A stretch of DNA of 56,275 nucleotides from Ascoidea asiatica JCM 7603 (lineage: Eukaryota; Fungi; Ascomycota): contig BCKQ01000002.1 in the NCBI GenBank assembly GCA_001600695.1, positions 304,613 to 360,887 on the forward strand, read 5' to 3'. The notes under the pieces are model-generated. The model searched no databases and had not been told where the DNA came from. It saw nothing but the letters and a program-made list of their open reading frames with translations. The position numbers and the translations under genes are program-made. Below, piece after piece: positions 3,370 to 11,204 of the stretch. Position 1 is the stretch's first letter; each line of letters begins with the position of its first letter.

Positions 3370-4638
3370 ATGTCTACAAATATTGATTCTTCTTTATCAA
3401 ATTCAGATTCTGCAACATTAATCTCAAATAATTATTCATCTTTATTATCCGAAAATTCATTTAATAATCTTAAAAATGATGATATTAATCAATCAAATGA
3501 TTCTTCTTTTTTAGAAACTGAAACTGAAACTGAAGATGATGATTATGAATACATCGATGATGAAGATGAAGATGACGATGATGATGATCAAGAAGATGAT
3601 ACTGATGATAGTGATGATGATGATGATGATGATGACGATCAAGAATCTCAACTTTCTTTAAATTCTCAAAATTTAAAAGATTATAATCATAATAATATTA
3701 AAAATCTTAAAAATATTGATAATAATACTTCTTTATCTTTATCTTCAACTTCAACTTCCTCATCCATAACAATAAATAACAATGATAATAATGATAATAA
3801 TAATAATAATAGTAATATTTTATCTAAAGATCAAAATTTAGATCTAACTCCTATAAATACAGTAAATAAAGTAAAACCTTCAGATTCAATACATATAACA
3901 AAAAATGAAATAAAAAATTCAAAATTTTCAAATTTATATCTTTTTCTTAAAAAAAATGAATTTCCAAGAAAACTTTTACATGTCTCAATAGGTTTTATAA
4001 CTCTTTATTTATATACTAAAAATTTTGAAATTAATCAAATTTTACCATATTTAAAAATTTCTTGTTTAATAATTTTTATTTTTGATTTACTTAGATTTAA
4101 ATTTAAAAATTTAAATTTAATTTATTGTAAAATTTTTGGTTTTTTAATGAGAAAAAATGAAATTTTAAATTCTTTTAATGGTGTAATTTATTATTTATTA
4201 GGTTTAATTTTTGTTTTTCAATTTTTTAAAAAAGATATTTCAATAATTTCTTTATTATTATTATCTTGGTCTGATACTGCTGCTTCAACTTTTGGTAGAA
4301 CTTTTGGTTATTTAACTCCAAAATTACCTTTTAATAAAAATAAATCTTTTGCAGGTTCAATTGCTGCTCTTTTTTCTGGTTTTTTTTCAACTTATTTATT
4401 TTATGGTTTTATTATACCTTTAACAAATTCAAATTTTGATTCAAATTATTTAAATAAAAATATTATGTGGTCAAATGAAAAAAGTTATTTATCTTTATTT
4501 TTTTTATCTTTATTATCAGGTTTAATTGCTTCAATATCTGAAGCAATTCAATTATTTAATTTAGATGATAATTTCACCATCCCAACTATTTCAAGTATAT
4601 TTTTATGGTCTATAATAAAATTATTTGAAAAAGTTTAA
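3370..4638 (+). CDS. DGK1: CTP-dependent diacylglycerol kinase
   Basis: EFPRKLLHVSIGF, cytidylyltransferase-type motif SWSDTAASTFGR...KSFAGS, LDDNFTIP, several TM segments, acidic/Asn-rich N-terminus. Confidence 0.93.
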   Translation: MSTNIDSSLSNSDSATLISNNYSSLLSENSFNNLKNDDINQSNDSSFLETETETEDDDYEYIDDEDEDDDDDDQEDDTDDSDDDDDDDDDQESQLSLNSQNLKDYNHNNIKNLKNIDNNTSLSLSSTSTSSSITINNNDNNDNNNNNSNILSKDQNLDLTPINTVNKVKPSDSIHITKNEIKNSKFSNLYLFLKKNEFPRKLLHVSIGFITLYLYTKNFEINQILPYLKISCLIIFIFDLLRFKFKNLNLIYCKIFGFLMRKNEILNSFNGVIYYLLGLIFVFQFFKKDISIISLLLLSWSDTAASTFGRTFGYLTPKLPFNKNKSFAGSIAALFSGFFSTYLFYGFIIPLTNSNFDSNYLNKNIMWSNEKSYLSLFFLSLLSGLIASISEAIQLFNLDDNFTIPTISSIFLWSIIKLFEKV

Positions 4639-8799: not shown

Positions 8800-9165
8800 A
8801 TGAATCAAGAACAAAACTTGAACTCTAGTTCTTTTGAAAGACATAATAGTAATTCATCAAATCTCCCATCATCTAATTTAAGTAATCGAAAAGATAAATT
8901 TGCAAATCTTTTTCAAATAAAATATAATAAGAAAGAAGAGCAAATTAATCGAGAAAGAGAGTTTTTCAATGTTATTGAAAATAATGATTTGGTTCTTATT
9001 CAATCTCTTAGGAAAGAAACTTTTGAGCTAAAGACTGAACCATCTTATGATACTAAAATAACTAATACTGTTTCTGTTATTTCCAGTGATAGTAAAGAAG
9101 AATTTCCAATTAGTATGACCAGAGCAAAATATGAACTTTATTTGAAGTTGATTGGCAAAGATTAA
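8800..9165 (+). CDS. Hypothetical 121-aa protein
   Basis: ATG start, hydrophilic protein-like composition, small GC patch upstream (about 8555-8650), convergent with the next gene. No recognised domain. Confidence 0.6.
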   Translation: MNQEQNLNSSSFERHNSNSSNLPSSNLSNRKDKFANLFQIKYNKKEEQINREREFFNVIENNDLVLIQSLRKETFELKTEPSYDTKITNTVSVISSDSKEEFPISMTRAKYELYLKLIGKD

Positions 9166-9244: not shown

Positions 9245-10974
9245 TCATGTATTAAAATATAAAACTTCGACATTCATGGAATTATTATCAACTAATCGGG
9301 CAGAATCAACAAAGGACTTTAAATTATCAGGAAGTAAATTCCGAATTTTTTCACAGAATTTACTAGCCATTTCTTTATTTAAATCTTCATTAGGATATAG
9401 CCATAATGTACAAATACAATATAAATTTTTATTTTTCCACGAAATTCCACAAACTGAATTACATATGTCTAATGAATCACATAATTTATCCTCTAAAATT
9501 ATTTGTAATAGATTTTTCCAAAAAGAAAATTCTAAGTTACCTGTAACCTGAAAATTTATCGTTCCAGACTCTTTCAATAATGGATTACTTCTCTTTGGTT
9601 TAATATTCAATCTAAATATATGTGTCTTGAAAGATTCATCATTATAGATAGAATCCTTATGATTTTGAAGCAAAAGATTTAGTTCCTAATGAAAAAAGTT
9701 AGTATATTTTATAAAAAGTGCTTTAAATTTCTGGTATTTTCATACTTTTTTGGTTTCAATTGTTCTTTCTATATGAAGCTTTCTCCTCTTGATTATGCTA
9801 TTATCGTCTTCAGCTTGAACAAATGTCGTAGTAGCAGATGTTGTCGGTCTAGAGTCACCATCCTCATATGGTCTAAAAGTTAAAAGACAAAAAAAAAAAA
9901 CAGAAAAGAAAATATGTTTTTGATTAGTATTCTGAACAGAGTATTGAATTCAAATAAACGGTAAAAAATAACTTACATATCACTCCAAACAACCCAAGGA
10001 AAGCTTAAACAATAATTCCCTTTTAATTTAGCTTTTAAAATGGCTCCCTGAGTTTTAAGAGAATCTGCATCATATTTTTCAAATAATGGAAGTTTTGATA
10101 AGGAATATTGAATATGACTAAAGCTATTAGGACTATTTGTTTCTGGCTTTATATCAAATAAAGCTGCTAATTTTGAAGAAGAGCAATCCATATTTTCCTT
10201 GATGCTTCTGATAGAGGTATTTCTAAAAGAAAAACTTGAATTTTGATCTGATAGCTCTTTTGATGGTTCCATGAAACCATGTGTATGCTCTATAGATTCT
10301 TCTATTTTAGGAGTATTTATAGATCTTTTGAAACCAAAAAAATAACAAAATTTATCTCTTAACTTTAACGAACTTCTGGTGGAAGATTTCATATCAGCCG
10401 AATCAACAATATTTTCAATCTCGTTACTTTGGGGTAATAAAGTTTCTCTAGACAACTCATTATTAGATTCTTTTAAATCCAATGTCTCATTTTTTTCTTT
10501 GTGCTTATCGGTTACAAATTCATCTTCTAATTTATCTAAGTTTTTTTTTTTTGAATTTTTCATATCTTTTTCTAAATTAAAATAATTCAAAAGCATTTTC
10601 AAATCTTCTTCCCCGATAACACTTTTTTCAACGTCATTATCATCATAATCAACAATACCTTCATAATCATTTGTGTTTTCTTTTGTATTAATATTCAATA
10701 CTTGAGGTTTTACAGCAACATTTGAATTATTGTTTTGGACAAACTTCACTTTCTGAAAGGAAGAATCATTTGAAGTGTTTTGATTTCGTTCACTTAAAGG
10801 AGTCATTAAATCTTTTGAACTAGACTTATTTTCATTGTTACAATCTGATCGTGTTATACTTGATGATAAGATTTCTATTGAATTTGAGCTTCCAATGCTA
10901 AGCTCTTCATGCAAACTTTTAGATTTGTTCAGCAGCTTTAAGGGCAATCTTTTATTATTATAAAAACTTGACAT
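9245..10974 (-). CDS. Three-exon gene for a divergent eIF4E-fold protein with a long N-terminal extension (521 aa); exons 10974-9977, 9872-9746, 9685-9245
   Basis: Both introns have canonical signals and splicing gives one continuous 1566-nt frame. eIF4E-like blocks: YCLSFPWVVWSD, THIFRLNIKP, FWKNLLQIILED, SVCGISW, ICTLWL. Confidence 0.8.
9686..9745 (-). other. Spliceosomal intron 2 of the eIF4E-like gene (60 nt, phase 0)
   Basis: GTATGA donor at 9745, perfect TACTAAC at 9704-9698, TAG acceptor ending at 9686. Joins in frame to the 9673-9245 ORF. Confidence 0.85.
9873..9976 (-). other. Spliceosomal intron 1 of the eIF4E-like gene (104 nt, phase 2)
   Basis: GTAAGT donor at 9976-9971, TACTAAT branch at about 9929-9923, long T tract, TAG acceptor ending at 9873. 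Confidence 0.85.
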
Positions 10975-11192: not shown

Positions 11193-11204
11193 TTTTGTGT
11201 CACT
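11193..11204 (-). promoter_or_regulatory. Middle sporulation element (Ndt80/Sum1-type), AGTGACACAAAA
   Basis: Matches gNCRCAAAW and the Sum1-extended AGYGWCACAAAA. Lies about 220 nt upstream of the eIF4E-like ATG. Confidence 0.6.

What the first reader, a model, noticed from the sequence alone, without database searches (positions are those of the whole stretch)
9245..10974. Hidden three-exon gene encoding a degenerate eIF4E-fold protein lacking the cap- and eIF4G-binding residues
Seen: two separate track ORFs plus an unlisted 127-nt middle exon join through two canonical introns into a 521-aa frame. The C-terminal roughly 200 aa line up by eye with eIF4E: LSFPWVVW resembles HPLxxxWxLW, HIFRLNIKP resembles YxLFKxGIxP, and FWKNLL..I, VCGI and TLWL follow in the expected order. 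Known: eIF4E stacks the m7G cap between W56 and W102 (with E103) and binds eIF4G/4E-BPs through the VEDFW73 surface. Here the core Trps (43/46/130/166 equivalents) appear kept, but P.WED reads PKRSN, exon 2 has no Trp at all, and TVEDFW appears as TKKELN. Inference: this is a lineage-specific pseudo-eIF4E with a roughly 320-aa disordered arm, acting as a decoy, scaffold or RNA binder rather than an initiation factor.
Basis: partly seen in the sequence, partly recalled or inferred. Interest (0 to 1): 0.85.

Follow-up and report, generated by a model that had tools for sequence, protein, structure and literature searches.

The report
Cap-pocket-less eIF4E-like yeast gene
This is a real three-exon budding-yeast gene whose product has a long floppy arm and a C-terminal eIF4E-shaped domain that has lost the residues eIF4E needs to hold the mRNA cap and eIF4G; it belongs to a small conserved yeast family that the latest survey of fungal eIF4Es did not list.

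Summary
Exons 10974-9977, 9872-9746 and 9685-9245 on the minus strand join through two yeast-type introns into 521 codons with no internal stop. The Ascoidea rubescens orthologue (549 aa, same RPN2-UTP7 neighbourhood) has introns at the same positions and phases, and so does Babjeviella.

The eIF4E fold is supported. Exon 3 alone scores 28.5 bits against Pfam IF4E (cut-off 28.7). A family profile hits only eIF4E chains in the PDB (best E 5e-8). Profile-profile probability against canonical eIF4Es is 97%. An AlphaFold model of the orthologue's domain matches only eIF4E structures.

In all 12 family sequences the W102 position is Arg or Lys, E103 is never Glu, and the W56 and W73 positions are never aromatic. 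W43, W46 and W166 are largely kept. The 2024 survey of 1462 fungal eIF4Es lists neither the A. rubescens nor the Babjeviella member and calls W102, E103 and W166 conserved.

My best reading is a non-cap-binding adaptor: a remodelled eIF4E fold plus an arm carrying five conserved short motifs, possibly induced in sporulation (MSE-like sites in 5 of 8 promoters). Its function is inferred, not shown. No RNA runs were listed. The joined protein was not sent to any search or fold tool.

The parts
9977..10974 (-). Exon 1: residues 1-332 plus 2 nt of the split Ile333 codon. It encodes the disordered arm (about residues 1-300), a pre-domain helix, and the first strand of the eIF4E-like domain (W327 and W330 at the W43 and W46 positions).
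   Evidence: It is 31% identical to the A. rubescens arm and ends at the same place...WVVW-x-D, in phase 2. The orthologue's residues 1-335 have pLDDT below 50.
9873..9976 (-). Intron 1, 104 nt, GTAAGT...ACTAAT...TAG, phase 2
   Evidence: The position and phase match those in A. rubescens (92 nt), Babjeviella (45 nt) and W. ciferrii.
9746..9872 (-). Exon 2, 127 nt, residues 333-375. It encodes an enlarged Trp-free loop in place of the eIF4E loop that carries W56 (conserved RPTTS motif), followed by strand 2.
   Evidence: It is 63% identical to P0001 residues 365-402. The matching loop in the orthologue model is disordered.
9686..9745 (-). Intron 2, 60 nt, GTATGA...TACTAAC...TAG, phase 0
   Evidence: The position is the same in A. 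rubescens (60 nt), Babjeviella (52 nt) and W. ciferrii, where it is read through as coding in the database protein.
9245..9685 (-). Exon 3, residues 376-521 plus the TGA stop. It encodes the bulk of the eIF4E-like domain.
   Evidence: Pfam IF4E 28.5 bits, E 1.5e-6, profile positions 52-148 of 158. It is 55% identical to P0001.
9584..9604 (-). IKPKRSN, the counterpart of the eIF4E motif G-I-x-P-x-W-E-D. R407 replaces W102 and S408 replaces E103.
   Evidence: Alignments. The family table shows Arg or Lys here in all 12 sequences.
9401..9451 (-). CGISWKNKNLYCICTLW hairpin. K461 sits at the R157 position, Y464-C465 at 160/161, I466 at K162, and W470 at W166.
10327..10368 (-). The best-conserved arm motif, LKLRDKFCYFFGFK (family pattern L-[KR]-x-RD-x-x-S-x-x-FG).
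   Evidence: It is aligned across the Ascoidea, Babjeviella, Ogataea and Wickerhamomyces members and the unnamed yeasts. It is predicted as a short low-confidence helix.
10567..10611 (-). Arm motif EEDLKMLLNYFNLEK
   Evidence: Conserved. Predicted as a helix at residues 125-145 of the orthologue.
11193..11201 (-). GACACAAAA, a match to the Ndt80 middle-sporulation element (gNCRCAAAW), 225 nt upstream of the ATG.
   Evidence: The CRCAAAW core occurs in 5 of 8 family promoters, with a Poisson-binomial P of about 0.001. This is suggestive only.

Best explanation
A genuine, spliced, selectively maintained gene of an Ascoidea-related budding yeast. It encodes a member of a small yeast-specific branch of the eIF4E superfamily. 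The C-terminal 200 or so residues keep the eIF4E cupped-hand fold and its structural tryptophans. Both cap-stacking aromatics and the guanine-reading Glu have been replaced: the W56 position is a non-aromatic residue in an enlarged disordered loop, W102 is Arg/Lys, and E103 is Ser/Thr/Ala. The dorsal eIF4G/4E-BP site is also remodelled: W73 is polar and L131 is Lys/Arg. Inferred mechanism: the protein does not bind the m7G cap or eIF4G and is not an initiation factor. The remodelled fold serves as a binding module for another ligand, most likely a protein. The roughly 320-residue disordered arm carries five conserved short motifs that recruit further partners. This is the same architecture as vertebrate SHLD3. 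Expression may be Ndt80-dependent, that is, during sporulation. Shown here: the gene structure, conservation, fold and residue replacements. Inferred: loss of cap binding, the adaptor role and the timing of expression.
For: Gene structure and conservation. The orthologue spans both junctions and has identical intron positions and phases. The RPN2-UTP7-X neighbourhood is shared by the window, A. rubescens and Babjeviella. Ogataea shares it too, with X lying between UTP7 and GET2. In W. ciferrii X is likewise divergent from UTP7.

Selection. The crude dN/dS is about 0.2 for exon 3 and about 0.4 for the arm, with dS near saturation. The domain is 55-63% identical to A. rubescens against 70% for the neighbouring UTP7.

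Fold. Pfam IF4E scores 28.5 bits for exon 3, 31.4 for P0001 and 37.8 for P0003. The family profile gives 16 PDB hits, all eIF4E, best E 5e-8. hhalign gives 97.4% probability, E 1e-11. The AlphaFold domain model has pLDDT 78, and the top 50 Foldseek PDB hits are all eIF4E at probability 1.0 with target TM-scores of 0.60-0.77. The ESM Atlas searches by features and by shape also return only IF4E.

Residues. Across 12 family sequences position 102 is always R/K, 103 is never E, and 56 and 73 are never aromatic. Position 131 is K/R in 11 of 12, and 162 is I/L/V/N. W43 is invariant, and W46 and W166 are kept in all but one sequence each.

Arm. It is disordered (pLDDT below 50 for residues 1-335 of the orthologue) with two short helices at conserved motifs. 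No YxxxxL-hydrophobic motif occurs in any arm. The domain's net charge is near zero, which gives no sign of a general nucleic-acid binder.

Precedent. SHLD3 uses the beta-sheet face of its eIF4E-like domain to bind RIF1 and its N-terminal region to bind REV7 (PMC10398656).
Against: There is no RNA evidence for expression or splicing. No binding experiment exists. The fold was modelled on the orthologue, not on the window's own joined protein. The alignment in the enlarged loop is uncertain, so a loop Tyr or Phe (Y335, F350) could in principle approach the pocket, although neither is conserved across the family. W166 and a basic residue at position 157 are retained, so some nucleotide affinity is not excluded. 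The test of the arm docking onto the domain gave no verdict. The MSE signal is absent from 3 of 8 promoters.
Confidence: 0.7

Rival explanations
1. The pocket has been retuned, not abandoned. The domain still binds a nucleotide or an RNA 5' end, such as a non-m7G or otherwise modified end or a mononucleotide. It would use the conserved Arg/Lys at position 102, the retained W166, the basic residue at 157 and the Tyr-Ser hairpin. On this reading the protein is an RNA-end reader with new specificity.
For: The replaced positions are conserved rather than random: R/K at 102 in 12 of 12, Y-S at 160/161 in 9 of 12, W166 in 11 of 12 and K at 157 in 6 of 12. The concave sheet is confidently modelled.
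Against: No conserved aromatic residue is available as a stacking partner. R112 and K162, which bind the phosphates, are lost. The domain is not basic overall. No known eIF4E family member binds a nucleotide without the W102-type stack; the 2024 survey calls W102 and E103 conserved across fungal classes and E103 and W166 the only non-variable residues in eukaryotes studied.
Confidence: 0.2
2. It is a decoy that titrates eIF4E partners (eIF4G, Eap1, p20/Caf20) away from Cdc33 and so represses translation.
For: It has the eIF4E fold. The yeast eIF4E review suggests that Saccharomycotina eIF4E2 may act as a translation inhibitor (PMC7139794).
Against: The dorsal binding site is not conserved. The W73 position is N/D/S/K/E/Q, V69 is K/N, L131 is K/R and L135 is variable in every member. 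W73 is essential for binding the 4E-binding motif in canonical eIF4E (established knowledge).
Confidence: 0.05
3. It is a decaying pseudogene or a chance ORF join with no function.
For: The Pfam score is borderline for the window's exon 3 alone. The W. ciferrii assembly has an in-frame TGA between the arm and the domain. No RNA run was listed.
Against: The 521-codon frame is intact. Orthologues are syntenic in four named yeast lineages and share intron positions. dN/dS is about 0.2 in the domain. Family-specific residues are conserved.
Confidence: 0.03

Closest known systems
Canonical eIF4E (Class I; S. cerevisiae Cdc33, human eIF4E-1)
   Same: It shares the fold and detectable sequence homology (Pfam IF4E). 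It keeps the structural Trp at positions 43, 46, 130 and 166, plus P100 and G151. The same genome also has a normal Class I copy (190 bits; sequence).
   Different: W56, W102, E103, R112, K162 and W73 are all replaced. The W56 loop is enlarged and disordered. A 320-aa N-terminal arm is added. It is therefore predicted not to bind the cap or eIF4G.
4EHP / Class II and Saccharomycotina eIF4E2
   Same: Both are extended, insertion-bearing eIF4E paralogues that do not replace Cdc33. Position 162 is hydrophobic, as in Class II as redefined in PMC11791286. Exon 3's best PDB sequence hits are 4EHP chains, though weakly (E 0.2).
   Different: Class II keeps an aromatic at position 56 together with W102 and E103, and it binds cap. 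The genome has its own separate eIF4E2-like gene that retains P-V-W-E-D.
Fungal F-Classes IV-VII (Hernandez et al. 2024, PMC11791286)
   Same: These are fungus-specific eIF4E clades with substitutions at positions 56, 112 and 162, and some have long N-terminal extensions.
   Different: All those classes keep W102, E103, R/K157 and W166. This family breaks W102 and E103. Its A. rubescens and Babjeviella members are not in that paper's table.
SHLD3 C-terminal eIF4E-like domain (vertebrate shieldin)
   Same: This is an analogy of architecture and proposed mechanism: an N-terminal unstructured region with short binding motifs, plus a C-terminal eIF4E-like domain that does not read caps and uses its sheet face to bind a protein, RIF1 (PMC10398656).

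Membership tests
eIF4E superfamily (Pfam PF01652 IF4E; homology and fold) | Significant sequence match to the IF4E profile or to eIF4E proteins | tested here: met
   Exon 3 alone scores 28.5 bits, E 1.5e-6, which is 0.2 bits under the curated cut-off. The orthologue P0001 scores 31.4 and P0003 scores 37.8, both over the cut-off. The family profile against the PDB returns only eIF4E chains, best E 5e-8. hhalign gives 97.4%. The joined window protein was not scored.
eIF4E superfamily (Pfam PF01652 IF4E; homology and fold) | Cupped-hand alpha/beta fold: a curved antiparallel sheet backed by three helices | tested here: met
   The AlphaFold model of P0001 residues 330-549 has pLDDT 78 and pTM 0.76. 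The top 50 Foldseek PDB hits are all eIF4E or 4EHP, at probability 1.0 and target TM-scores of 0.60-0.77. The Atlas shape search gives IF4E at TM 0.67. This was done on the orthologue, which is 55-63% identical to the window's domain.
eIF4E superfamily (Pfam PF01652 IF4E; homology and fold) | Structural core tryptophans W43, W46, W130 and W166 | tested here: met
   The window has W327, W330, W431 and W470. W43 is invariant in the family, W46 and W166 are kept in all but one sequence each, and position 130 is W, Y or F.
Functional cap-binding eIF4E (Classes I-VII as defined in PMC11791286) | Aromatic residue at W56, one half of the cap sandwich | tested here: not met
   The aligned residue is K361 in the window and T/L/S/K/I/Q in its relatives. 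No aromatic residue is conserved in the loop. The loop alignment is approximate.
Functional cap-binding eIF4E (Classes I-VII as defined in PMC11791286) | W102 and E103 (the second stacking Trp and guanine recognition). The survey calls both conserved across all fungal classes, and E103 non-variable in the eukaryotes studied. | tested here: not met
   The window has R407 and S408. Position 102 is R/K in 12 of 12 family sequences, and position 103 is never E.
Functional cap-binding eIF4E (Classes I-VII as defined in PMC11791286) | Basic residues at 112, 157 and 162 that bind the phosphates | tested here: not met
   The window has T417, K461 and I466, so only position 157 is basic.
Functional cap-binding eIF4E (Classes I-VII as defined in PMC11791286) | Physical binding of m7GTP or capped RNA | not testable with these tools
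   This needs an m7GTP-resin or fluorescence titration assay with recombinant protein.
eIF4F subunit or 4E-BP target | Dorsal site for the YxxxxL-hydrophobic motif (V69, W73, L131, L135) | tested here: not met
   The window has K374, N378, K432 and Q436. Position 73 is never aromatic in the family, and position 131 is K/R in 11 of 12.
4E-binding protein (Eap1, Caf20, 4E-BP type) | A YxxxxL-hydrophobic motif in the disordered region | tested here: not met
   A regular-expression scan found no such motif in any family arm. The only matches lie inside strands of the folded domain.
SHLD3-like adaptor (functional analogy only) | Sequence or profile homology to SHLD3, and binding of REV7 and RIF1 | not tested
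   No SHLD3 sequence was available by reference. Only the architecture (disordered N-terminus plus a C-terminal eIF4E-like domain) is shared.

The most novel reading that the evidence does not exclude
This family is a third, budding-yeast-specific class of the eIF4E superfamily, alongside eIF4E1 and eIF4E2. It has exchanged the aromatic cap sandwich for a conserved basic residue and breaks the supposedly non-variable E103. It would be switched on by Ndt80 during sporulation and use the old cap slot to read a different ligand, either a protein partner or a non-canonical RNA end. That would make it a natural example of an initiation-factor fold re-purposed as a developmental adaptor.
Probability: 0.3. 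Interest if true: 0.7.

Novelty: new variant of a known kind. Interest (0 to 1): 0.6.

Why it matters
eIF4E classification rests on a handful of cap-contacting residues. The most recent fungal survey calls W102 and E103 conserved in every fungal class, and E103 and W166 non-variable across the eukaryotes studied. Here is a conserved, syntenic family under purifying selection that keeps the fold but has lost W102, E103, W56 and the eIF4G site. It went uncatalogued in at least two species that survey analysed. It shows that the eIF4E fold has been re-used for something other than cap binding in budding yeasts, as in SHLD3 in vertebrates. The Ogataea member is intronless, and Ogataea is genetically tractable, so the question of what a cap-less eIF4E fold does can be tested directly.

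Tried and rejected
- RNA evidence: the look-up of sequencing runs listed no run, so read laying could not be used.
- Word-indexed protein searches: all three added almost nothing, only Ogataea species and one close relative of P0004. The family's range therefore rests on one single-sequence scan with exon 3 (14 hits) and is a lower bound.
- Arm docking onto the domain: complex prediction with the orthologue's arm motifs (residues 205-295) against its domain (312-549) gave no verdict. This counts neither for nor against binding.
- Full-length AlphaFold model: the arm motifs had only low confidence, so it gives no evidence of docking in cis.
- S. cerevisiae counterpart by synteny: I considered YER085C, near UTP7 and GET2. 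It is Ldm1, a mainly alpha-helical Myo2 adaptor (bioRxiv 10.1101/2025.02.21.639583). Rejected.
- Which eIF4E class the family derives from: hhalign against the genome's own Class I and eIF4E2-like proteins, each as a single sequence, was too weak to decide.
Not supported by conservation.
- 4E-BP idea: no YxxxxL-hydrophobic motif in any arm.
- Locus tags and accessions of the named family members: none appears in the paper library.
- Exons were searched separately by reference, and the orthologue P0001 stood in for the fold. The exons were joined only inside a local script to count codons, stops and CTG codons.

Full report
**1. The observation**

Reading the minus strand gives five parts:
- exon 1, 10974-9977;
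- intron 1, 9976-9873, with GTAAGT, an ACTAAT branch-like site and TAG;
- exon 2, 9872-9746 (127 nt);
- intron 2, 9745-9686, with GTATGA, a perfect TACTAAC box and TAG;
- exon 3, 9685-9245.

The two outer exons correspond to ORFs 9973-10974 and 9245-9673 in the mechanical ORF list. The middle exon is not listed there. A local count gives 521 sense codons plus TGA with no internal stop. Exon 2 translates without any Trp.

No RNA run was listed for the stretch, so splicing could not be checked on reads. It was checked by comparison instead.

**2. Comparative support for the gene model**

A scan of 1.84 billion representative proteins with exon 3 found 14 hits. The best is a 549-aa hypothetical protein of Ascoidea rubescens, P0001 (ASCRUDRAFT_71955). 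It is 55% identical over exon 3, 63% over exon 2 and 31% over exon 1, and it runs uninterrupted across both proposed junctions.

Intron positions agree across species:
- The A. rubescens gene has two introns at exactly the same codon positions and phases: after W-V-V-W-x-D plus 2 nt, and after I-E-T-K-K.
- The Babjeviella inositovora gene has the same two introns.
- In Wickerhamomyces ciferrii the same two introns are visible. The second is read through as coding in the database protein.
- The Ogataea copies, and a group of unnamed yeasts in which the gene lies next to DIB1, are intronless.

Gene order also agrees. RPN2, then UTP7, then this gene transcribed divergently from UTP7, is shared by the window, A. 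rubescens, Babjeviella and Ogataea, where the gene lies between UTP7 and GET2. W. ciferrii shares the UTP7 adjacency.

A crude Nei-Gojobori estimate against A. rubescens gives dN 0.33 and dS 1.6 for exon 3, and dN 0.67 and dS 1.6 for exon 1, with dS close to saturation. The neighbouring UTP7 is 70% identical between the two species. The gene is real, old and constrained. The host is most likely a relative of Ascoidea; this is inferred from the best hit and the synteny.

**3. The fold**

Sequence evidence:
- Exon 3 alone matches Pfam IF4E at 28.5 bits (E 1.5e-6, cut-off 28.7, profile positions 52-148).
- Of the ten top hits scanned, six family members match IF4E, two of them above the cut-off (P0001 at 31.4, P0003 at 37.8). 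In P0004 and P0011 the match spans almost the whole profile.
- A profile of nine family domains finds 16 PDB sequences at E up to 1. All are eIF4E, 4EHP, eIF4E3 or a giant-virus vIF4E, and the best is E 5e-8.
- hhalign against canonical eIF4Es, including this genome's own, gives 97.4% probability and E 1e-11.

Structural evidence:
- AlphaFold on the orthologue's residues 330-549, with the family alignment, gave pLDDT 78 and pTM 0.76.
- The 50 best Foldseek matches in the PDB are all eIF4E-family structures, at probability 1.0 and target TM-scores of 0.60-0.77.
- The ESM Atlas returns only IF4E clusters, both by features and by shape.

The joined window protein was not submitted anywhere. The fold evidence therefore rests on the orthologue and on exon-wise searches.

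**4. Residues**

I mapped positions through the hhalign alignment and the family alignment. Human eIF4E numbering is on the left.

| Human eIF4E position | Window residue | Across the 12 family sequences |
|---|---|---|
| W43 | W327 | invariant |
| W46 | W330 | kept in all but one |
| W56 | about K361 | never aromatic; lies in an enlarged loop that is disordered in the model |
| V69 | K374 | K/N in most |
| W73 | N378 | never aromatic |
| P100 | P405 | invariant |
| W102 | R407 | always Arg or Lys |
| E103 | S408 | never Glu |
| R112 | T417 | mostly T, also A/L/I; R only in the Ogataea pair |
| W113 | I418 | hydrophobic (I/L/V) |
| W130 | W431 | W, Y or F |
| L131 | K432 | Lys/Arg in 11 of 12 |
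| L135 | Q436 | variable |
| R157 | K461 | K in 6 of 12 |
| 160/161 | Y464-C465 | Tyr-Ser in 9 of 12 |
| K162 | I466 | I/L/V/N |
| W166 | W470 | kept in all but one |

The replacements are conserved in kind. This looks like a remodelled surface rather than decay.

**5. The arm**

A full-length model of the orthologue has pLDDT below 50 for residues 1-335. It shows short, low-confidence helices at two conserved motifs. The window's arm is rich in Ser, Lys and Asn.

Five islands are conserved across the family:
- S-I-E-I-L-S-S-S;
- E-E-D-L-x-x-L-L-N-Y-F;
- L-[KR]-x-R-D-x-x-S-x-x-F-G;
- S-F-S-F-[RK]-N;
- F-P-x-S-[RK]-L, just before the domain.

No arm contains a 4E-binding motif.

**6. What is known**

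The 2024 survey of 1462 fungal eIF4Es (PMC11791286) lists one eIF4E for A. rubescens and two for Babjeviella. None is the family member found here. [quoted passage not shown]

The yeast eIF4E review (PMC7139794) describes only eIF4E1 and eIF4E2 in Saccharomycotina. The locus tags and accessions of the named members appear in no paper in the library.

The window's genome also has a normal Class I gene and an eIF4E2-like gene that retains P-x-W-E-D. This gene is therefore a third, uncatalogued type.

The nearest functional precedent is SHLD3. Its eIF4E-like C-terminal domain binds the RIF1 HEAT repeats through its sheet face, while its N-terminal region binds REV7 (PMC10398656).

**7. Mechanism**

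*Shown:* the fold, the loss of the canonical cap and eIF4G contacts, the conserved replacements, and the disordered arm with its motifs.

*Inferred:*
- The protein does not bind m7G cap or eIF4G (my estimate, about 85%).
- It works as an adaptor whose remodelled eIF4E fold binds another ligand. A protein is more likely than RNA, because the domain is not basic.
- The arm motifs recruit partners.

A retuned nucleotide or RNA-end pocket is the main rival (about 20%). A decoy for eIF4E partners is unlikely, because the dorsal site is gone. A pseudogene is essentially excluded.

**8. Regulation lead**

Five have at least one site: the window, at 11201-11193, which is 225 nt upstream of the ATG; A. 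rubescens at -129; W. ciferrii with four sites; and two of the DIB1-adjacent loci. About one promoter with a site would be expected by chance, giving a Poisson-binomial P of about 0.001. Three promoters have none. The KEN boxes noted earlier are not conserved. Sporulation-specific expression is a testable lead, not a finding.

**9. Verdict**

The thing is a new variant of a known kind: a cap-pocket-less, arm-bearing branch of the eIF4E superfamily in budding yeasts. Its biochemical role is unknown, and it can be tested in Ogataea.

Noticed in passing
G000:C26:27241-27708 (locus L002:1162-2529): The genome has a second non-canonical eIF4E gene. It is a 455-aa ORF (IF4E 66-74 bits) that keeps P-V-W-E-D but is interrupted by long poly-Asn runs, and it looks like a Saccharomycotina eIF4E2 / Class II type. 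The 2024 survey lists only one eIF4E for the related A. rubescens.
   Followed up: partly
window 11193-11201 (minus strand), and the promoters in L004, L005, L007 and L010: MSE-like Ndt80 sites (CRCAAAW) occur upstream of 5 of 8 family members, against about 1 expected (P about 0.001). W. ciferrii has four within 361 nt. This suggests induction in sporulation.
   Followed up: partly
L010:3420-4767 (Wickerhamomyces ciferrii CAIF01000076.1): The W. ciferrii orthologue is annotated as two genes (156 aa and 231 aa). An in-frame TGA lies between the arm and the domain at about 3888-3890. Intron 2 is read through as 21 coding residues in CCH43350.1. This may be a nonsense allele, a sequencing error or readthrough.
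   Followed up: partly
window 10930-10935 (codons 14 and 15 of the gene): The gene's only two CTG codons lie side by side in the arm. If the host decodes CUG ambiguously or as Ser, as reported for Ascoidea (from my own knowledge), these two residues may not be Leu. The domain is unaffected.
   Followed up: no
window 8800-9165 (plus strand): A 121-aa ORF lies tail-to-tail with the gene and has no Pfam match. In A. rubescens the gene downstream of the orthologue is a DUF1689 protein instead.
   Followed up: no
L005:2605-5451, L007:4470-7197, L011:318-3415: In a group of unnamed yeasts (Logan assemblies) the family member is intronless. It has moved from the UTP7 neighbourhood to a position between DIB1 (DIM1 family) and an amidohydrolase gene.
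   Followed up: partly
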